Virus record (IMG/VR): IMGVR_UViG_3300027710_000011
Coordinates: 212,773 to 276,772 of that record
Reading direction: 5' to 3' (one strand)
Length of the DNA: 64,000 nt
Shown in pieces: positions 1,651 to 64,000 of this stretch (position 1 is its first letter; the number at the start of each line of letters is the position of its first letter). A model generated the notes under the pieces. That model saw nothing but the letters and a program-made list of their open reading frames with translations, made no database searches and was not told the origin of the DNA. Position numbers and translations under genes: made by a program.

Positions 1651-2355
1651 ATGAAAAACTCAATCTTGTCTCAAGCTCTGGAGAGTTTGGAGACACCCGT
1701 TCCCGCAGCATTGCCACCTGCTACTGAACCAGTTGCACCTGCTCCACAAGCAGCCCCTCCCACTCACGTCATCAGTCGTGAGAACACGGACGCTGCTGTT
1801 GAGCAAAAGCTCGAAGCCATGAGTCGCGACAGTGTCGTGATGAATGCGCCGCTGTCCACCCTCTTCACTCGTGCGCTGAATATTCAATTGGCCAAGAAGA
1901 ACGTGGTGACTGGCGAGTTCGATGGCGTTACGCCTGCAGCCACAACTCAAGCTGAAGCCGTTGCGACTGAAAGCCAGGCGCAAGACGCTTACTTCTCCGC
2001 AGCAGCCCGCCGAGTCTTCCAAGACACTCACAAGGTGGAAGAGCGGATTGACATTACGGATCCGGTAAAGCCTGAAGTTCCTGAAAGCTTGGAAACCGGT
2101 GGTTCAGGTACAAAGCTGATTGCGCCAGCCACTCAGGAAGAAACCATCAAGTTCTTCAACTCCAACGACCTGGATGGTTTGGAGCCCAAGTTCGTTTTCT
2201 ACCGCGACGTTGGCATTAAGACTGACGGCGTGGTGAAGGAAGACTGGGAAACCCAGAAGATGATTGCTTTGAACGAGCAAAGCAGTGATGCCAATTACGT
2301 GGTTGAATCCATCGAAGTGGTGATTCGTACTCGCAAGGTTGACATCAAGGACTAA
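1651..2355 (+). CDS. Putative virion head (inner-body/ejection-type) protein with a processed propeptide
   Basis: GGAG RBS; acidic and Ala/Pro-rich; carries A/S-X-E motifs (ALE, SLE, ATE) of the kind cut by the phiKZ gp175-type protease; followed by a terminator hairpin. Confidence 0.55.
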   Translation: MKNSILSQALESLETPVPAALPPATEPVAPAPQAAPPTHVISRENTDAAVEQKLEAMSRDSVVMNAPLSTLFTRALNIQLAKKNVVTGEFDGVTPAATTQAEAVATESQAQDAYFSAAARRVFQDTHKVEERIDITDPVKPEVPESLETGGSGTKLIAPATQEETIKFFNSNDLDGLEPKFVFYRDVGIKTDGVVKEDWETQKMIALNEQSSDANYVVESIEVVIRTRKVDIKD

Positions 2356-2368
2356 AAGTCTGAAAAAG

Positions 2369-2396
2369 TAAAGAGGGGGTAAAACCTCTCTTTATG
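2369..2396 (+). terminator. Hairpin terminator ending in TTTATG
   Basis: TAAAGAGGGGGT-AAA-ACCTCTCTTTA, then TG, directly after the stop at 2355. Confidence 0.7.
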
Positions 2397-2631
2397 TTGT
2401 CACTTGTAAAACGCTGCTAAGGACCCTACAAAGGCCATAGATGAAATAAAAAAGAAAAGTCGAGGGTAGGTAGCTACCCAAATCTGAGTTCAATACAAGC
2501 CTTTTTAAAAGGTCACTATGCCAAAAAATACTGGCTAGCTTACTAATATAGTTAAAGCTATTTTAACTAAACCTAGTATAATAGGGGGGCCCCAGACCCC
2601 CGATAGTATACTAAGAATAATAAAGAGTATA

Positions 2632-2673
2632 ATGCGCGTGCGCGCACACATGCGCACGCATACGCGCACGCGT
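2632..2673. repeat. 42-bp perfect alternating purine-pyrimidine tract (Z-DNA-prone)
   Basis: ATGCGCGTGCGCGCACACATGCGCACGCATACGCGCACGCGT, flanked by TATAAT at 2628 and 2676. Confidence 0.85.
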
Positions 2674-2720
2674 TCTATAATGAGGGTTTCTTAAAAAGAG
2701 AAATTTTTTAAGAGTTAAGC

Positions 2721-2748
2721 GGCTGGGTAGTAGACCCAGCCTTTTATG
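2721..2748 (+). terminator. Hairpin ending in TTTTATG inside the non-coding element
   Basis: GGCTGGGT-AGTAG-ACCCAGCC-TTTTATG. Confidence 0.6.
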
Positions 2749-3082
2749 CTGAGAAGATGAGATCTTGAAGTTATAGGCTTAGAAAAGGTTTTAAGAGGTC
2801 TTAGAGCTATTTTCGTTGCTTAGATGAGCAACGATGAGTCTGAGAGAAAAGAAAGCCGTATAGACGGTTTAAACGAATCTAGCCAATTGACAGACCAACT
2901 ACCAGAAAAAGGACTTCGTCCAAAGTCTTGAGAGATTACCCTCCCCCAAAGCCCCCTCCCGCGAAACCGGGGCGGGGCGGCTTTTGACTTTACTTCCCTT
3001 TTCCTTTGTGGAGGTACTCACAACACCTCTTCGCCGTTCATGAGTGGCGGCAACCTGAAACAACGTTACTGAGGCGAACGAA

Positions 3083-4324
3083 ATGCAAGAAGCAAAGATC
3101 AGAGACATCTTCGACGATGTCTGCCGGAACGTTGTGGCTGATAAGGCATTGAGCCTGAGGATCCATCGCTATGTCGTGGACTTTATCAACCGCAACAGTG
3201 AACACTCCCAATTCTTCGGGGGCAACTTGACAGGTGTTCAAGTCGTGCGGTTTGTGGAGTCGGACAAGAACCACTGGTTCGACGATATCCTGGACGTTAA
3301 CGAACATGACTTGCAGGACAAGATCAACAAGCTGGCTTGCGTACAAGGCAAGGACGGTGTGCGTCACGTGTCTGGTGACGCTTTGAACCAATCGTGCGTG
3401 TGGCTTTGCTACAAGTTCCACAATGCATCGAATCTCACCATCGACGAGCGTGCCCAAACCATCCAAGACATCTTGCTGGCTTTGCAGTTCAAATTCCTGA
3501 CCAGTCGTTTGTTCCGTCACTTCAAGTTCCCAGCCGACCGCGCTTCGGCTGAGGCTGCGTACGCGCAGTTGTCGAACAAGTATTCGATCAAGATCTACGG
3601 TACTTGGTTGAAAGTCCTGGAAGCACGTTGCTCTGACATCACGGCAAAGACTAGCTCTCACTTCAATGTGATTGCTCGTATGGATGACGACATGGGCGTT
3701 GTTCGAATGCTCAATGACATTCAAGGTCGTCTGCGTGACATGCTCAAGAACATCTTTGGTCAGTTCGTACAGATCAAGGACGCGGGTGAGAAAATCACAT
3801 CCAGCTCCGGTGTGGTTGACTTTGACGGCGTGGAAGTGCTCAAGGATCGAAGTAAAGGCTTGGCAACTTACACCAACTACATGAACTCCGTTGTGGGTGA
3901 CAAGAACTCATTCATTCGTGGTGAGTTGCTGAAAGTGGTTCAAGACATCTTCCCTTCTGCCCCACCCAAGCACATCGTCAGTGCACTTGAATACATCTCG
4001 AACAATTACTTGAAATCTCGTTCCGACGATATTGCCAAGTTGATCGAGATGACGATGATTCACAGCTTCACGTACTTGGAGAAGAATCGTCAAACAGTTC
4101 AAGCCGGCATTAACTTGCCCAAACTGTTGGAGCGTTTGCGCGGTGTTTACACATCGTCCCGTTCTACGGATCCTGACTTGATGGATCTTCGTCGGTTTGC
4201 AGAAGTCATTGTTCGTAAGTCTGTAGATACACGCACAGATAGCGTCATTGCTTCTGTGCGAACCGCAGTCTTGCTTTACATCGTGTCTCGTGCATACACG
4301 ATGTGTCATTGGTCCAACGTGTAA
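3083..4324 (+). CDS. Conserved phiKZ-like virion-associated protein (resembles the phiKZ gp32 family)
   Basis: 413 aa, GAGG RBS; FFGGNLTGV motif; lies next to the terminase/tail block. Family assignment is from memory. Confidence 0.55.
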   Translation: MQEAKIRDIFDDVCRNVVADKALSLRIHRYVVDFINRNSEHSQFFGGNLTGVQVVRFVESDKNHWFDDILDVNEHDLQDKINKLACVQGKDGVRHVSGDALNQSCVWLCYKFHNASNLTIDERAQTIQDILLALQFKFLTSRLFRHFKFPADRASAEAAYAQLSNKYSIKIYGTWLKVLEARCSDITAKTSSHFNVIARMDDDMGVVRMLNDIQGRLRDMLKNIFGQFVQIKDAGEKITSSSGVVDFDGVEVLKDRSKGLATYTNYMNSVVGDKNSFIRGELLKVVQDIFPSAPPKHIVSALEYISNNYLKSRSDDIAKLIEMTMIHSFTYLEKNRQTVQAGINLPKLLERLRGVYTSSRSTDPDLMDLRRFAEVIVRKSVDTRTDSVIASVRTAVLLYIVSRAYTMCHWSNV

Positions 4325-4814: not shown

Positions 4815-4860
4815 GTCGTGAGATACATCGGCGCTTGCGCGTCAATTGCTTCAGTGATTA

Positions 4861-4910
4861 TAAAAAGCCAACACCTATCCGGGAACTAACTCGGGTAGGT
4901 GTTGGCTTTA
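4861..4910 (+). terminator. Long hairpin terminator
   Basis: AAAGCCAACACCTATCCGGG...CTCGGGTAGGTGTTGGCTTT. Confidence 0.7.
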
Positions 4911-5046
4911 TTCCGTCACTTTATCTTTTTTTATTATATACACCAAGCTTATGGTGAATGCGCTGCATCCATGCGGCCATTAAATGGAGAGGTTATGCAT
5001 CACTTCAAAGATTTTTGTCTTAGAGAGAAGTTGGAGTAACTAAGTA

Positions 5047-7227
5047 ATGATACTCTTCTTAGACGACTGGAAGAAATATCCAAGAGCAATCATCGACATG
5101 AAGACGACGAACACGTCCTTCATTCGACTGGCTTCGGTTTATCGCGCAATGGGTATCGAGAACAATGCGTTCTTGCTCGCCCTACTGAATCCAGACTTGC
5201 AAGGAGTTGATCCATACTCGCCTGATTTGACGCTTGAGCAGATGGCGGCGATCAGTTTGGAATGCAAGCACAATCCTTGGTATTTCTTTCGAGAGATTGC
5301 TAAGGTCCCTGCTTCGGGCGGTAACGACGCAATGCGGCTTCAGGCCAATCGAGGCAATATTGCATTGTTCTGGTTGTTCTTCAATCACATCACGCAATTT
5401 CTAATTCAGCCACGGCAGACAGGTAAGTCTATTAACGTTGACGCGTTGATGATCTTGCTGCTGAACATCATCTGTATTGCTACAAAGATCAACTTGCTGA
5501 CAAAGGACGACACTCTGCGTCGTGCCAACGTTCAGCGGATCAAGGACATGATGGAGGAACTCCCTCCATACCTGTTCCTGAAGGGTCCGAGTGATCTGAA
5601 CAATACAGAAGAAATTACCATCAACGCGCTGGGTAACCGTTACACGACTCACGTTCCACAAAGCTCTCCAAAGCGTGCGGATAACATGGGCCGGGGTTTG
5701 ACTACTGCGGTTATGCATGTTGACGAAGCACCCTTCCAGGTGAACATTGAGATTGCGTTGAAAGCAGCTCTGCCTGCTATGACTGCAGCTATCGAAGCAG
5801 CTAAGCGTGAAATGGCTCCGTATGGAACTATCTTCACTACAACGGCTGGTAAGAAGGATGACAAGGACGGCGCTTTCATTTATCGCGAGATGATGGAGTC
5901 TGCACCTTGGACTGAGAAGTTCTTGGATTGCAAGAACCTTGTAGATCTTGAAACAACTATTCGTACCAATAGCCGAGGAGGTAAGGTTCGAGTTCGTTGC
6001 GTCTTCAATCATCGGCAACTGGGTAAGACGGATGAATGGATGTTGCGAGCTCTGGAGGATTCCTTCCAGTCTGGCGATTCTGCTAACCGAGACTTCTTCA
6101 ACATGTGGACGTCCGGCTCTCAGACCAACCCGATCCCTATTCACTTGCTCGAGCGCATTGCTGGCTCACGCATGGAGCCTTTGGAAACAGAGATCTCCAG
6201 TCAAGACCGTTACATCACGCGCTGGTATATTCCGGCCGATACGATTCATGGCCGCATGGCGAACGGTAAGTTTGTCCTAGTCCTTGATACCAGCGAAGCC
6301 GTCGGCAATGACGATATTGGTTTGTTGCTGATCGATCTGGCTACAACCGAAGTGATTGCGTCAGGTACGTTCAACGAAACCAACTTGATTAAGTTCTCTC
6401 GTTGGCTGTTGCAATGGTTCATCCGCTTTGAGAACATCACCGGTTTGTTGGAGCGACGCTCTACTGGTGGGATGATCATGGACTACTTGATCGTTTACAT
6501 GATCGAAGCTGGTATTGATCCCTTCAAGCGCTTGTTCAACACAGTGGTGCAAGACTACCGTGAGAATCACGACAACTTCGAAGAGATTCGTAAACCAATG
6601 AATCGTCGCGATCCTCGTATCTACGATCGCTTCAAGAAGACGTTTGGTTTCTCCACTTCAGGCGGTGACGGTACGTATAGTCGTAATGGACTTTACTCCA
6701 GCACACTGATGATGGCTGCTAAGCGTGGTTGTGATTATGTTTACGACAGTACCCTTATTGACCAGGTGAATGCCTTGATCAATAAGAACGGTCGAGTCGA
6801 TCACCCGCAAGGCGGACACGACGATATGGTCATCGCGTGGCTGCTTGGTTTCTGGTTCATGACTAAAGCAGTTAACGTTGGTTTCTACGGTATTGATTCA
6901 CGACTACTGATGTCTAAGAATCAAGACTTGTCGAATCCGGCCAGCGTAATACCTACTCAAGATCAAGAGGTCCAAAACGCTCTGCGTGATAAGATCGAAG
7001 GTCTGACAGAAGAGCTCGGTAAAGAGCGTGACAAGTTTGTAGCTCAGCGTTTGGAGCAAGAGATTCGAAGTCTGATGAAATACGTCATCGTAAAAGAAGA
7101 CGAAATCTACAGCGTCGATGAACTGCTTAGAACGGCTAAGGAAAAGCGTGTTGAGAAGAAACGCTTTAACAGCTACCAGCAAAGTCCTTATCAAATGACT
7201 TCGCTGCAACCAGGTTACTATCGATAG
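5047..7227 (+). CDS. terL: Terminase large subunit (phiKZ gp25-like)
   Basis: Walker A IQPRQTGKS; Walker B MHVDE; coupling motif TTT; nuclease motifs VLVLDTSEAVGND and GGHDDMVIA. Confidence 0.95.
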   Translation: MILFLDDWKKYPRAIIDMKTTNTSFIRLASVYRAMGIENNAFLLALLNPDLQGVDPYSPDLTLEQMAAISLECKHNPWYFFREIAKVPASGGNDAMRLQANRGNIALFWLFFNHITQFLIQPRQTGKSINVDALMILLLNIICIATKINLLTKDDTLRRANVQRIKDMMEELPPYLFLKGPSDLNNTEEITINALGNRYTTHVPQSSPKRADNMGRGLTTAVMHVDEAPFQVNIEIALKAALPAMTAAIEAAKREMAPYGTIFTTTAGKKDDKDGAFIYREMMESAPWTEKFLDCKNLVDLETTIRTNSRGGKVRVRCVFNHRQLGKTDEWMLRALEDSFQSGDSANRDFFNMWTSGSQTNPIPIHLLERIAGSRMEPLETEISSQDRYITRWYIPADTIHGRMANGKFVLVLDTSEAVGNDDIGLLLIDLATTEVIASGTFNETNLIKFSRWLLQWFIRFENITGLLERRSTGGMIMDYLIVYMIEAGIDPFKRLFNTVVQDYRENHDNFEEIRKPMNRRDPRIYDRFKKTFGFSTSGGDGTYSRNGLYSSTLMMAAKRGCDYVYDSTLIDQVNALINKNGRVDHPQGGHDDMVIAWLLGFWFMTKAVNVGFYGIDSRLLMSKNQDLSNPASVIPTQDQEVQNALRDKIEGLTEELGKERDKFVAQRLEQEIRSLMKYVIVKEDEIYSVDELLRTAKEKRVEKKRFNSYQQSPYQMTSLQPGYYR

Positions 7228-63377: not shown

Positions 63378-64000
63378 ATGTTCCCAAAGTTTCACGGTAT
63401 TGCCCTGGCAGCGAACAGCTGGATCAGCAACGCAGTTGTGGAGAACCTGGCTGCTGACCCGACGCCCCTGGGTGCCGGTCGCATCTGGTACAACACTTCC
63501 GACAAGGGCCTGAAGTTCAGCTCGCTCGACGCTGGCGGCGCCATCGTTGTGCAAGTGGTCGCCACTGGTGCCGACGTTGCTGCTGCTGTTGCAGCCATCG
63601 CCGCTCTGGGCGCTCGCGTCACTGCCGTTGAAGGCAGCTACATCAACAAGGACGGTTCCGTTGCCTTCACTGGCGATGTGAATGCTGGCGGCAACAAGGT
63701 CGTCAACGTTGCCAATGGCACGGTTGGTTCGGATGCAGTGAACTATAGCCAGCTGCAAGCTGCTATCACTTCGCTGGCCAACGCCTTCCTGTACGTCGGT
63801 ACCGTTGCTGGCGGTGCTGACGCTGGTGCTGCCTTCGACATGTCGACGTCGGCCGACGTGACCGTTGGTGCCTACTACAAGGTTTCCGCTCCCGGTTACT
63901 TCAAGGTCGGCGCAGCTGGCGTCCCCTTCTTCGCCAACACCAACGACGGCCTGGTCTTCAACAGCCTGAGCGGTGTTGACGTCATCGACAACACCAACAG
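63378..64000 (+). CDS. Fibre/adhesin-like virion protein, truncated by the window edge (MFPKFHGIALAANSWISNAVVENL...)
   Basis: Translated by hand: AGGAG RBS, frame open to 64000. Contains GRIWYNT, a coiled coil, and the YadA-neck-like NKVVNVANGTVGSDAVNYSQL; very strong codon bias. Confidence 0.8.
   Translation, partial: MFPKFHGIALAANSWISNAVVENLAADPTPLGAGRIWYNTSDKGLKFSSLDAGGAIVVQVVATGADVAAAVAAIAALGARVTAVEGSYINKDGSVAFTGDVNAGGNKVVNVANGTVGSDAVNYSQLQAAITSLANAFLYVGTVAGGADAGAAFDMSTSADVTVGAYYKVSAPGYFKVGAAGVPFFANTNDGLVFNSLSGVDVIDNTN

What the first reader, a model, noticed from the sequence alone, without database searches (positions are those of the whole stretch)
2356..3082. Large non-coding, hairpin-packed element upstream of the terminase block: candidate replication origin, packaging site or ncRNA locus
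Seen: this is the longest gene-free stretch in the window (about 730 bp) and is AT-rich. It is packed with short inverted repeats: GGGTAG/CTACCC 2464-2479, CCTTTT/AAAAGG 2500-2512, TAGTTAAA/TTTAACTA 2549-2569, TCTTAAAAA/TTTTTAAGA 2689-2713, GGCTGGGT/ACCCAGCC 2721-2741, TCGTTGCT/AGCAACGA 2813-2834, GGAC/GTCC 2911-2921, a C-run/G-run stem at about 2948-2985 and CGCC/GGCG 3032-3049. Inference: jumbo phages are normally gene-dense, so this looks like a cis-acting DNA element (origin, pac site or nuclear-shell tether) or a cluster of small RNAs. I know of no defined origin or pac site for this group.
Basis: partly seen in the sequence, partly recalled or inferred. Interest (0 to 1): 0.65.

Follow-up and report, generated by a model that had tools for sequence, protein, structure and literature searches.

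The report
Conserved non-coding locus before packaging genes
The longest gene-free stretch of this nucleus-forming jumbo phage is a non-coding control region kept far more constant than the silent sites of its neighbouring genes; it holds two terminators around a gene-less unit and a unique 42-base alternating GC-rich palindrome, but whether it acts as RNA, a protein-binding site, a replication origin or a packaging site is still open.

Summary
Window 2356-3082 is the longest ORF-free gap of the whole 276,772-bp phage genome. Every listed hairpin is at its stated coordinates, and the left half folds far better than shuffled sequence.

The region is functional. In the closest relative it is 90% identical (97% over 2606-2855), while fourfold-degenerate sites of both flanking genes are about 55% identical. 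The gap persists in all 11 distinct relatives of the clade that I fetched. Its small ORFs do not evolve like coding sequence.

Anatomy:
- Two phiKZ-type intrinsic terminators on the + strand (hairpin plus TTATG tail), T1 at 2369-2400 and T2 at 2721-2752, enclose a gene-less unit.
The next longest such run in the genome is 17 nt.
- The tract's core, GCGTGCGCGC, occurs once in the genome. It is 58-fold enriched just upstream of the phiKZ-gp032-like gene across 88 related loci.
- A 338-nt conserved leader follows, with a single-copy C5N4C5 motif whose strand and position flip between subclades.

Best reading (0.5): a transcription-control and small-RNA cassette for the gp032-like/terminase genes, with the palindrome as a sequence-specific site. 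A replication origin or pac site is not excluded (0.25). GC skew gives no origin signal, and no RNA or raw-read data were available.

The parts
2369..2400 (+). T1: intrinsic terminator of the upstream 234-aa (RP12 ORF022-like) gene. Hairpin 2369-2394, with a TTTATGTTGT tail at 2391-2400.
   Evidence: Terminator scan; perfect 7-bp stem. It matches the phiKZ terminator motif 'hairpin + YTTATKYYGT' (PMC10914365). In relatives the stem sequence differs but the hairpin and the TTATG tail are kept. The same hairpin recurs once elsewhere in the genome.
2401..2517 (+). Least conserved spacer. It holds the hairpins GGGTAG/CTACCC (2464-2479) and CCTTTT/AAAAGG (2500-2512), and a conserved A-rich run at about 2443-2459.
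   Evidence: 42 of the 80 differences from the closest relative fall in 2356-2505; alignment.
2518..2569 (+). Conserved AT-rich box (ATGCCAAAAAATAC ... TAGTTAAAGCTATTTT). It is a candidate promoter or binding site of the gene-less unit, and includes the TAGTTAAA/TTTAACTA repeat.
   Evidence: Zero differences from L096 in 2506-2555. Conserved in 6 lineages, partly in L007. AGCTATTTT occurs four times in the genome (both strands); the only two intergenic copies are here (2556, 2805).
2574..2613 (+). H_up: long hairpin (TAGTATA..GGGGG / CCCCC..TATACTA), 18 nt before the alternating tract. One arm contains the first TATAAT (2577-2582).
   Evidence: (I1). A stable hairpin sits upstream of the tract, most clearly (dG -10 to -27) in 8 of the 11 relatives (17-39 nt upstream); the automated pick was weak or off-target in L104, L007 and L111, where hairpins were seen by eye. 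The hairpin sequences are unrelated across relatives.
2626..2633 (+). AGTATAAT box abutting the 5' end of the tract (second TATAAT). Poorly conserved outside the two closest genomes.
   Evidence: (D5).
2632..2673 (.). Perfect 42-nt alternating purine-pyrimidine tract (CG/CA/TG steps). It is built as the inverted repeat GCGTGCGCG ... CGCGCACGC, and is prone to Z-DNA and cruciform formation.
   Evidence: Unique in the genome; the next longest run is 17 nt. It is 42/42 identical in L096 although neutral sites are 55% identical. A GC-rich alternating tract is present in all 10 relatives whose contig covers the position. The exact 10-mer occurs once in the genome. It is 58-fold enriched within 1.2 kb upstream of gp032-like genes across 88 loci. 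The outer helix is sequence-conserved rather than covarying.
2674..2683 (+). TTCTATAATG box abutting the 3' end of the tract (third TATAAT, 2676-2681). It is the best conserved promoter-like element.
   Evidence: Seen as TATA(A/T)(A/T)G in WIN, L096, L100, L102, L106, L007, L006 and L108. No sigma-70 -35 hexamer at a 17-nt spacing, and not called by the promoter scan.
2689..2713 (+). Hairpin D (TCTTAAAAA / TTTTTAAGA).
   Evidence: Perfect 9-bp stem. Compensatory changes in L100 (helix 3).
2721..2752 (+). T2: phiKZ-type intrinsic terminator (GGCTGGGT-AGTAG-ACCCAGCC plus TTTTATGCTGA). It carries the TATG word (2745-2748) that, from my knowledge, marks phiKZ-type late promoters.
   Evidence: Terminator scan. 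It is one of at least 12 intergenic 'hairpin+TTTATGCTG' units in the genome. Motif identity with phiKZ terminators. 5 of 8 stem pairs have compensatory changes and 100% of cells are paired.
2753..2938 (+). First half of the 338-nt leader of the gp032-like gene. It holds conserved words (GGTTTTAAGAGG, a second AGCTATTTT box at 2805-2813, GTTTAAACGAATC) and the hairpins 2813-2834, 2856-2867 and 2911-2921.
   Evidence: Only 7 differences from L096 in 2606-2855. Alignments. The 2813-2834 stem is invariant while its loop varies. A hairpin at the 2856-2867 position is kept with different sequences in L100, L106 and L107 (read by eye).
2939..2985 (.). C-rich motif CCCTCCCCC-AAAG-CCCCCTCCCGCG followed by its G-rich partner CGGGGCGGGGCGGC. 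The minus strand reads GGGAGGGGGCTTTGGGGGAGGG, a G-quadruplex-type run pattern.
   Evidence: C5N1-4C5 occurs once in the genome. Conserved in WIN, L096, L100, L102, L104, L106, L107 and L007. In L006, L108, L110 and L111 the same motif is G-rich on the + strand and lies upstream of the alternating tract. It is single-copy in the L006 genome and in RP12.
3000..3082 (+). Last part of the leader: TCCTTTGTGGAGG (GGAGG at 3010-3014), a nearly invariant 40-nt block CTCTTCGCCG...CGGCAACCTGAAACAACG with the CGCC/GGCG repeat, and the ribosome-binding GAGG at 3071-3074 before the ATG at 3083.
   Evidence: Alignment of 4-6 lineages. This is sequence conservation with little covariation.
3083..4324 (+). 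Downstream gene: 413-aa all-helical protein, homologue of phiKZ gp032 / 201phi2-1 gp36 / PhiPA3 gp017. It is always the gene that follows the element.
   Evidence: phrog_2921; 290 phage records; PhiPA3 annotation note. AlphaFold model pLDDT 87 with no PDB analogue.

Best explanation
The region is a conserved non-coding transcription-control cassette placed in front of the phiKZ-gp032-like gene and the terminase genes.

Proposed sequence of events:
1. The upstream gene's mRNA ends at terminator T1.
2. Between T1 and a second + strand terminator, T2, lies a self-contained gene-less transcription unit. It consists of a conserved AT-rich box, a 5' hairpin, the 42-nt GC-rich alternating palindrome, a TATA(A/T)(A/T)G box and hairpin D.
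3. This unit yields a short structured RNA that stops at T2. The RNA would be about 60 nt if started at the TATAATG box and about 180 nt if started at the AT-rich box.
4. Read-through of T2, or re-initiation at the TATG word inside T2's tail, gives the gp032-like mRNA with a 338-nt conserved leader.
5. The palindrome, with half-site GCGTGCGCG kept across the clade, is read by a sequence-specific factor. Being prone to Z-DNA and cruciform formation, it may also respond to supercoiling. Either way it sets how much transcription enters the downstream operon.

Shown: the anatomy, the conservation, the terminator motif identity, the covariation and the + strand bias downstream of the tract.

Inferred: that the boxes are promoters, that the RNA exists, that a protein binds the palindrome, and that the target is the gp032-like/terminase operon.
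For: - Purifying selection on non-coding DNA. The gap is 90.1% identical to L096, against 55-57% at fourfold sites of both flanking genes. The corresponding figures are 72 vs 43% for L100 and 66 vs 38% for L102. Identity is 97% over 2606-2855. An independent fish-gut contig aligns continuously over 2296-3627 while parts of the coding flanks fall below 80%.
- Position. A gap of 600-1060 nt lies between the same two genes in every relative whose gap lies whole within the contig (eight lineages plus the P0006 contig); L106 and L107 show at least 688 and 523 ORF-free nt up to the contig start.
- Terminators. T1 and T2 match the experimentally mapped phiKZ terminator motif, a hairpin followed by YTTATKYYGT. 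The same unit recurs at least 12 times between genes in this genome. No ORF lies between T1 and T2.
- Structure. 92.9% of cells are paired against 82.7 +/- 1.5% in shuffles (0 of 500 reach the observed value). 11 pairs have double changes against 3.9 expected. Sliding the partners drops pairing to 23-60%.
- Strand. The 80 nt after the tract fold better on the + strand in all 11 relatives, summing to -204 vs -157 kcal/mol.
- Precedent. Short RNAs from 'a TSS immediately followed by a TTS' are documented in 201phi2-1 and phiKZ (PMC11512511).
- The tract and the gene travel together. The exact GCGTGCGCGC 10-mer is 58-fold enriched upstream of gp032-like genes. It sits 20-50 nt before a phiKZ-type terminator in FLC9 and L110 as well.
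Against: - No expression data. No RNA run holds the sequence.
- No promoter could be assigned. The TATAAT boxes lack a -35 hexamer. The conserved AT-rich box is not a genome-wide promoter word.
- The right half of the leader shows sequence conservation but hardly any covariation.
- The G5N3G5 / C5N4C5 motif changes strand and position between subclades. This fits a DNA site better than a fixed part of an mRNA leader.
- Strict 42-nt purine-pyrimidine alternation, including the loop, is not needed for an RNA hairpin.
- The gp032-like protein has no recognisable DNA-binding fold, so no binder is identified.
- Only 6 sequences enter the covariation test.
Confidence: 0.5

Rival explanations
1. A single-copy DNA site acting in cis: the replication origin (possibly transcription-activated, as in T4 ori(uvsY) or T7) or the packaging initiation (pac) site. 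It would be recognised through the palindrome and the G5N3G5 motif, which can form non-B DNA (Z-DNA, cruciform, G-quadruplex/i-motif), with AT-rich DNA beside them.
For: Both motifs occur exactly once in 277 kb. The G-motif is also single-copy in the L006 genome and in RP12. The 10-mer is nearly unique in FLC9 and G002. The half-site sequence is conserved, whereas the neighbouring hairpins drift and compensate. The G-motif works in either orientation and position. The tract is kept even where it overlaps the end of a coding gene in FLC9-type phages. The locus lies 2 kb upstream of TerL. Promoter-like boxes and AT-rich DNA (39-41% GC) flank the tract.
Against: Cumulative GC skew has its extremes at 132.5 and 250.4 kb and passes the locus without inflection. 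There are no iterons; direct repeats are few and short. Near-complete conservation over about 580 nt and two oriented terminators are not what a minimal ori or pac site needs. In PhiPA3 the gp032 homologue is not next to TerL and has no such gap. No initiator or small terminase gene is identified nearby. Termini and coverage could not be examined.
Confidence: 0.25
2. One or more free-standing, trans-acting non-coding RNAs whose job is unrelated to the neighbouring genes. One example would be an RNA whose C-rich run (CCCUCC, CCCCCUCCC) pairs with the phage's own GGAGGG ribosome-binding sites or titrates a host factor.
For: There is a terminator-bounded gene-less unit with covarying hairpins. 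The C-rich words are the exact complement of the RBS words enriched between this phage's genes. sRNAs conserved among giant phages exist.
Against: No Rfam family matches. In four relatives the motif would be G-rich in a + strand RNA, so a single pairing model does not fit all lineages. The element never leaves the gp032-like gene. No expression data exist.
Confidence: 0.15
3. Small protein-coding genes fill the gap (for example the 35-aa ORF 2824-2931), or the gap is a decayed gene.
For: ORFs of 33-69 aa exist on both strands. The 35-aa frame stays open in L096.
Against: In the 35-aa ORF, 8 nucleotide differences from L096 give 6 amino-acid changes. Indels in the gap are 1-2 nt. Other frames break between WIN and L096. 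There is no ribosome-binding site before the ORF. Conservation is highest where there is no ORF at all. No PHROG or Pfam signal exists for anything adjacent that could have decayed.
Confidence: 0.04
4. Neutral spacer whose hairpins are chance or ordinary terminators only.
For: 11 of 380 genome windows have as many perfect stems. Two of the hairpins are plain terminators.
Against: Substitution rate is about one fifth of that at neutral sites. The 42-nt tract is unique. Motif placement is conserved across lineages whose loci span 33-58% GC, with gaps as low as 26% GC.
Confidence: 0.02

Closest known systems
phiKZ-type intrinsic terminators (stem-loop followed by 5'-TTAT-3'; motif BCCYCCCCHWWDGGGRRGGBYTTATKYYGT; Putzeys et al. 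2024, PMC10914365)
   Same: T1 and T2 are GC-rich stem-loops followed by (T)TTATG(T/C)(T/C)G(T/A). The unit recurs between genes throughout this genome, and the stems covary.
   Different: T2 does not end a protein-coding unit, since nothing is encoded between T1 and T2. Termination was not measured here.
5'-UTR-derived and intergenic sRNAs of giant phages (201phi2-1 sRNA005 / phiKZ sRNA upstream of gp182; PMC11512511)
   Same: A short gene-less unit in front of a conserved late gene, ending at a terminator. Position and hairpins are conserved among related jumbo phages.
   Different: A different gene neighbourhood (gp032 homologue, not the tail gene) and no sequence similarity. It is much longer (about 700 nt in all), it holds a GC-rich alternating palindrome, and expression is unproven.
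Transcription-activated phage and plasmid origins (T4 ori(uvsY)/ori(34), T7 primary origin, ColE1 RNA II). Recalled from my own knowledge, not tested.
   Same: Promoter-like boxes, a structured non-coding transcript, G/C runs and AT-rich DNA in one single-copy locus.
   Different: No replication data, no skew signal, no DNA-unwinding element defined, and no RNase H or primer evidence.
pac sites of headful phages (P22, SPP1, P1). Recalled from my own knowledge.
   Same: A single-copy site close to the terminase genes.
   Different: Known pac sites lie in or beside a small-terminase gene and are short. No small terminase is identified here, and the element follows the gp032 homologue rather than TerL.
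Z-DNA-forming (CG/CA)n tracts and palindromic operators
   Same: A perfect 42-bp purine-pyrimidine alternation made of CG, CA/TG and a few TA steps, built as an inverted repeat with a conserved half-site.
   Different: No Z-alpha protein is encoded. The in vivo conformation and the binder are unknown. My searches found no described phage counterpart.

Membership tests
phiKZ-type intrinsic terminator | GC-rich stem-loop directly followed by YTTATKYYGT | tested here: met
   T1 tail at 2391-2400 matches 10/10. T2 tail at 2743-2752 matches 9/10. Stems of 7-8 bp.
phiKZ-type intrinsic terminator | Stem conserved as a structure (compensatory changes) in relatives | tested here: met
   T2: 5 of 8 pairs have double changes and 100% of cells are paired. 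T1 stems differ in every lineage.
phiKZ-type intrinsic terminator | Transcripts end there | not testable with these tools
   No RNA run holds the locus.
Any curated RNA family (Rfam 15) or tRNA/tmRNA | Covariance-model match at or near the gathering score | tested here: not met
   Best hit is sraA at 26.9 bits against a gathering score of 56, over T1 only. ARAGORN finds none.
Sigma-70 promoter | -10 TATAAT with a -35 TTGACA-like hexamer at 16-18 nt, or an extended -10 TG | tested here: not met
   Three perfect -10 hexamers, but the -35 positions match at most 2 of 6, there is no TG, and none is called by the scan.
Replication origin | Switch of cumulative GC skew at the site | tested here: not met
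   Extremes lie at 132,516 and 250,407; the locus is at 215,128-215,854. The local profile is monotonic.
Replication origin | Iterons or repeated initiator boxes beside an AT-rich unwinding element | tested here: inconclusive
   There are only two-copy short repeats (AGCTATTTT twice; inverted GCGTGCGCG half-sites). AT-rich DNA is present.
Replication origin | Copy-number peak or initiation in vivo | not testable with these tools
   Runs are held as contigs only.
pac site | Adjacent to terminase genes | tested here: inconclusive
   TerL lies 2 kb downstream in this clade. It is inverted in RP12. The gp032 homologue is away from TerL in PhiPA3. No small terminase is recognised.
pac site | Packaging-series termini at the site | not testable with these tools
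   No raw reads. The record ends fall in a repetitive gene.
Z-DNA-forming sequence | Long uninterrupted purine-pyrimidine alternation rich in CG and CA/TG steps | tested here: met
   42 nt without a break.
Z-DNA-forming sequence | Left-handed conformation under physiological supercoiling | not testable with these tools
   Needs chemical or antibody probing.
G-quadruplex motif | Four G-runs of at least 3 with short loops on one strand | tested here: met
   The minus strand of 2939-2962 reads G3-A-G5-CTTT-G5-A-G3. Folding into a quadruplex was not tested.
Protein-coding gene | Substitutions biased to synonymous sites, with indels in multiples of 3 | tested here: not met

The most novel reading that the evidence does not exclude
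The locus is the cis-acting DNA site at which this clade of nucleus-forming jumbo phages starts replication or packaging. It would be defined by a single-copy Z-DNA/cruciform-prone palindrome (GCGTGCGCG...CGCGCACGC) and a single-copy, orientation-independent G5N3G5 element, with local transcription through it as the activating step. This would be the first origin or pac site defined for Chimalliviridae.
Probability: 0.25. Interest if true: 0.85.

Novelty: new variant of a known kind. Interest (0 to 1): 0.6.

Why it matters
The reviews and papers I could search describe no replication origin, packaging site or gene-specific control region for nucleus-forming jumbo phages. This locus is a concrete candidate that can be tested.

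It covers about 600 nt of non-coding DNA under stronger constraint than a family-wide core gene. It carries two single-copy motifs that can be mutated. Cultured phages (Burkholderia phage FLC9, Ralstonia phage RP12) hold reduced versions of it.

If it is a control cassette, it shows that giant phages with their own RNA polymerases use long structured leaders, and perhaps a supercoil-sensitive palindrome, to gate the packaging genes. If it is an origin or pac site, it opens replication and packaging of the phage nucleus to genetics.

Tried and rejected
- Rfam at permissive E-values and ARAGORN: nothing.
- blastn of the region against 50,697 phage records: only the start of the gp032-like gene matches.
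- First search for related loci with the single protein: nothing. With an alignment it worked. The metagenome scan returned only the source contig and distant relatives.
It is uninformative, because the motif is meaningful only in context.
- Function of the neighbouring proteins: there are no Pfam hits of note, and PHROGs gives only a family of unknown function for the 413-aa protein and nothing for the other neighbours. PDB by sequence gives nothing. The AlphaFold model is confident (pLDDT 87) and all-helical, but Foldseek finds no PDB analogue at E <= 0.001. So no DNA-binding or initiator role could be assigned.
- Z-alpha domain in the genome: none.
- Minus-strand RNA idea: raised by the better fold z-score of the minus strand in the window. 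It is not supported across relatives, where the + strand folds better overall and always downstream of the tract.
- Idea that AGCTATTTT or TATAAT are general promoter words of this phage: rejected.
- Host-RNAP dependence of the relatives: I remembered it the wrong way round. RP12 and RP31 are rifampicin-resistant; RSL2 and RSF1 are sensitive.
- GC skew: no signal at the locus.
- One script call returned no answer and was repeated.
Full report
**Context**

The window is the last 64 kb of a 276,772-bp IMG/VR virus record with 49.7% GC. The finding lies at genome 215,128-215,854.

The flanking genes, all on the + strand, are:
- a 234-aa ORF (1651-2355), a weak homologue of RP12 ORF022 and FLC9 gp22;
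- a 413-aa ORF (3083-4324, phrog_2921), found in 290 phiKZ-like phage records and annotated in PhiPA3 as similar to phiKZ gp032 / 201phi2-1 gp36 / EL gp13;
- a 137-aa ORF, followed by the large terminase at 5047-7227.

Relatives carry a PhuZ-type tubulin and DUF7484 a few kb upstream. The phage is therefore a chimallivirus-type jumbo phage. The nearest cultured relatives are Ralstonia phages RP12, RP31 and FLC1-1B and Burkholderia phage FLC9, at 46-47% amino-acid identity.

**Check of the observation**

The gap of 727 nt is the longest ORF-free stretch of the entire genome. GC is 43%, with 39-41% in the centre.

Hairpin density is above chance but not extreme:
- There are 7 perfect stems of at least 6 bp, against 1.9 +/- 1.4 in shuffles (3 of 500 reach 7).
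- However, 11 of 380 genome windows do as well.
- The left half (2400-2750) folds much better than shuffles (z = -4.3 on +, -7.1 on -). The right half does so only mildly (z = -2.3 and -2.0).

Positions 2632-2673 are a perfect 42-nt alternation of purine and pyrimidine made of CG, CA/TG and a few TA steps; the next longest run in 277 kb is 17 nt. Three TATAAT hexamers lie on the + strand within 105 nt around it. This is about 9e-5 improbable genome-wide. The general rarity of TATAAT in the genome is just TA-oligomer depletion.

**The region is under strong purifying selection and is not coding**

Through the gp032-like protein I fetched a graded series of relatives from IMG/VR, ENA, JGI and Logan assemblies:

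| Locus | aa identity to the window's gp032-like protein | Gap length (nt) |
|---|---|---|
| L096 | 89% | 729 |
| L100 | 84% | 659 |
| L102 | 79% | 601 |
| L104 | 68% | 650 |
| L106 | 63% | at least 688 |
| L107 | 64% | partial |
| L108 | 58% | 1060 |
| L110 | 58% | 609 |
| L111 | 57% | 671 |
| L006 | 56% | see below |
| L007 | 55% | see below |

All keep a long ORF-free gap between the same two genes. For L006 and L007, the ORF map and reading of the sequence give several hundred nt.

The gap evolves far more slowly than neutral sites:

| Relative | Gap nt identity | Fourfold-site identity in flanking genes |
|---|---|---|
| L096 | 90.1% | 55% and 57% |
| L100 | 72% | 43% |
| L102 | 66% | 38% |

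For L096 the whole-gene nucleotide identities are 81.5% and 77.6%.

The differences from L096 pile up in 2356-2505. The stretch 2606-2855 has 7 differences in 250 nt. An independent fish-gut contig aligns without a break over 2296-3627 while parts of the coding flanks fall below 80%.

The only ORF that stays open, 35 aa at 2824-2931, takes 8 nucleotide changes that give 6 amino-acid changes. Indels are 1-2 nt, and the other frames break. So the region is functional and non-coding.

The long gap is specific to this clade. RP12 and FLC9 have about 100-126 nt at this position, with their long gaps one gene further upstream. PhiPA3 has 61 nt.

**Anatomy**

1. *T1 (2369-2400).* A hairpin with a TTTATGTTGT tail right after the stop codon.
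2. *Variable spacer (2401-2517).*
3. *Conserved AT-rich box (2518-2569).* Its word AGCTATTTT has its only two intergenic copies in the genome here, at 2556 and 2805.
4. *H_up (2574-2613).* Most relatives show a stable hairpin upstream of the tract, most clearly in 8 of 11 at 17-39 nt, with unrelated sequences.
5. *The 42-nt tract (2632-2673).* It is flanked by AGTATAAT and TTCTATAATG. The latter box is kept as TATA(A/T)(A/T)G in eight lineages.
6. *Hairpin D (2689-2713).*
7. *T2 (2721-2752).* GGCTGGGT-AGTAG-ACCCAGCC followed by TTTTATGCTGA.
8. *A 338-nt leader.* It holds conserved words and small hairpins, the C-rich motif CCCTCCCCC-AAAG-CCCCCTCCCGCG with a G-rich partner (2939-2985), a nearly invariant 40-nt block, and the ribosome-binding site before the ATG at 3083.

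**Terminators define a gene-less unit**

The unit 'GC hairpin plus TTTATGCTG' occurs at least 12 times between genes of this genome, always pointing downstream. It equals the conserved intrinsic-terminator motif mapped by ONT-cappable-seq in phiKZ: a stem-loop followed by a TTAT region, consensus ...YTTATKYYGT (PMC10914365).

T1 and T2 both fit the motif, and both are on the + strand. Nothing is encoded between them.

On a six-lineage alignment, the four helices from the tract to T2 behave as follows:
- 92.9% of cells are paired, against 82.7 +/- 1.5% in shuffles (0 of 500 reach the observed value).
- 11 pairs carry changes on both sides, against 3.9 expected.
- Sliding the partners drops pairing to 23-60%.
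- T2 has 5 of 8 pairs with compensatory changes.

The 80 nt after the tract fold better on the + strand in all 11 relatives (-204 vs -157 kcal/mol summed). The tract itself and H_up show no strand preference.

Short RNAs made by a start site followed at once by a terminator are documented for 201phi2-1 and phiKZ (PMC11512511).

**The alternating tract is conserved as a sequence**

A GC-rich alternating tract lies in the gap of all 10 relatives whose contig covers the position, with 15-42 nt of perfect alternation. L008/L009 lack it.

Its ends are the inverted half-sites GCGTGCGCG and CGCGCACGC with a variable spacer. In FLC9 and L110 they abut as an 18-bp palindrome.

In the covariation table the outer helix of the tract is nearly invariant: 1 of 11 pairs has a double change. 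The neighbouring hairpins have drifted and compensated. This pattern points to sequence-specific recognition rather than a merely structural stem.

The 10-mer GCGTGCGCGC has this distribution:
- It occurs once in this genome.
- It occurs two or three times in FLC9 and in a 313-kb IMG/VR genome, and in each case one site lies just before the gp032 homologue.
- Across 88 loci it occurs 13 times in the 101 kb lying within 1.2 kb upstream of gp032-like genes, against twice in the other 895 kb.
- GC-rich alternating runs of at least 14 nt show the same 20-fold bias.

In FLC9-type phages the palindrome overlaps the last codons of the upstream gene and is still kept. In FLC9, L110 and the window it lies 20-50 nt before a phiKZ-type terminator.

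**The G/C motif**

C5N1-4C5 occurs once in the genome. It is C-rich on the + strand and downstream of T2 in the window, L096, L100, L102, L104, L106, L107 and L007. The same motif (GGGGG-T(1-3)/TA-GGGGG with flanking G-runs) is G-rich on the + strand and upstream of H_up in L006, L108, L110 and L111.

It is single-copy in the L006 genome and in RP12, where it lies 3.4 kb upstream of the gp032 homologue. A motif that keeps its sequence while changing strand and place behaves like a DNA site or an autonomous module.

Its C-rich form is also the exact complement of the ribosome-binding words (GGAGGG, AGGAGGG) enriched between this phage's genes. I note this without being able to test it.

**Tests bearing on origin or pac**

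Cumulative GC skew has its minimum at 132.5 kb and its maximum at 250.4 kb, and passes the locus smoothly. There are no iterons.

The runs that hold the sequence are kept as contigs only, so termini and coverage are unreadable. The record's own ends fall in a repetitive gene.

The neighbouring proteins give no hint. Pfam gives nothing of note, PHROGs gives only a family of unknown function, and there are no PDB hits. The confident model of the 413-aa protein is all-helical without a PDB analogue. No Z-alpha domain is encoded.

**Most likely mechanism**

I commit, at 0.5, to a transcription-control cassette:
- T1 ends the upstream message.
- A gene-less unit, started at the TATA(A/T)(A/T)G box or at the AT-rich box, makes a short structured RNA that stops at T2.
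- Read-through, or re-initiation at the TATG word in T2's tail, produces the gp032-like/terminase message with its long conserved leader.
- The palindrome is a sequence-specific, possibly supercoil-responsive, site that gates this flow.

The anatomy, conservation, motif identity, covariation and strand bias are shown. The promoters, the RNA, the binder and the target are inferred.

The main rival (0.25) is a single-copy DNA site for replication or packaging. It best explains the uniqueness of the motifs, the orientation-free G-motif and the strict alternation. The two readings are not exclusive, because an origin can be activated by local transcription. A free-standing trans-acting RNA gets 0.15. 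Small proteins or a decayed gene (0.04) and neutral spacer (0.02) are essentially excluded.

**Comparison with what is known, and novelty**

The terminators are ordinary members of the phiKZ terminator class. The gene-less unit resembles the 5'-UTR-derived sRNAs of giant phages but shares neither sequence nor neighbourhood with them.

My literature searches found no described origin, pac site or Z-DNA-type element in nucleus-forming phages.

I rate the locus a new variant of a known kind: a conserved phage regulatory/ncRNA region with an unusual single-copy alternating palindrome. Interest is 0.6. The conservation is striking, and the locus gives a concrete handle on open questions, but its function is unproven.

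Noticed in passing
whole genome (e.g. genome 211403, 232586 = window 19814, 254197 = window 41425): The motif TGATATGT(RRYTGAAA..TAGA) occurs 18 times, all on the + strand. 13 copies are intergenic, and several lie 6-120 nt before + strand ORF starts. It is a candidate second class of TATG-type phage promoter.
   Followed up: partly
window 4815-5069; L096 6213-7139; L104 6221-7123: Close relatives carry a 300-308-aa HNH_3 endonuclease ORF directly in front of the large terminase. The window has only a 232-nt gap there. A fish-gut contig has about 0.9 kb extra at 5046-5069. This looks like a mobile homing-endonuclease polymorphism.
   Followed up: partly
whole genome: The unit 'GC hairpin + TTTATGCTG' recurs at least 12 times between genes on both strands, matching the phiKZ terminator motif. 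The T1 hairpin itself recurs at genome 114279-114306 on the minus strand.
   Followed up: yes
genome 1-300 and 276473-276772 (window 63701-64000): Both ends of the record lie in a GC-rich (61-65%), repetitive Ala/Gly-rich coding sequence. The contig probably broke at a repeat, so its ends are not physical genome ends.
   Followed up: no
window 2939-2957 versus intergenic regions genome-wide: The C-rich leader words CCCTCC and CCCCCTCCC are the exact complement of the ribosome-binding words (GGAGGG, AGGAGGG) enriched between this phage's genes.
   Followed up: no
FLC9 record 319600-319609; IMG/VR G002 308788-308797: FLC9 and a 313-kb relative each hold a second copy of GCGTGCGCGC, 11-18 kb upstream of the gp032-proximal copy across the record start.
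   Followed up: no
window 3083-4324: The phiKZ-gp032-like core protein gives a confident all-helical AlphaFold model (pLDDT 87) with no PDB analogue at E <= 0.001 and no Pfam family. It is a family-wide protein of unknown fold class.
   Followed up: partly
runs X2, X3 over window 2907-3156: Two unrelated samples ('organism A' and a drinking-water metagenome) each hold a roughly 230-250-nt contig 99.6% identical to the leader and gene start. Ponds, lakes, fish gut and wastewater hold relatives. The phage group is widespread in fresh water.
   Followed up: no
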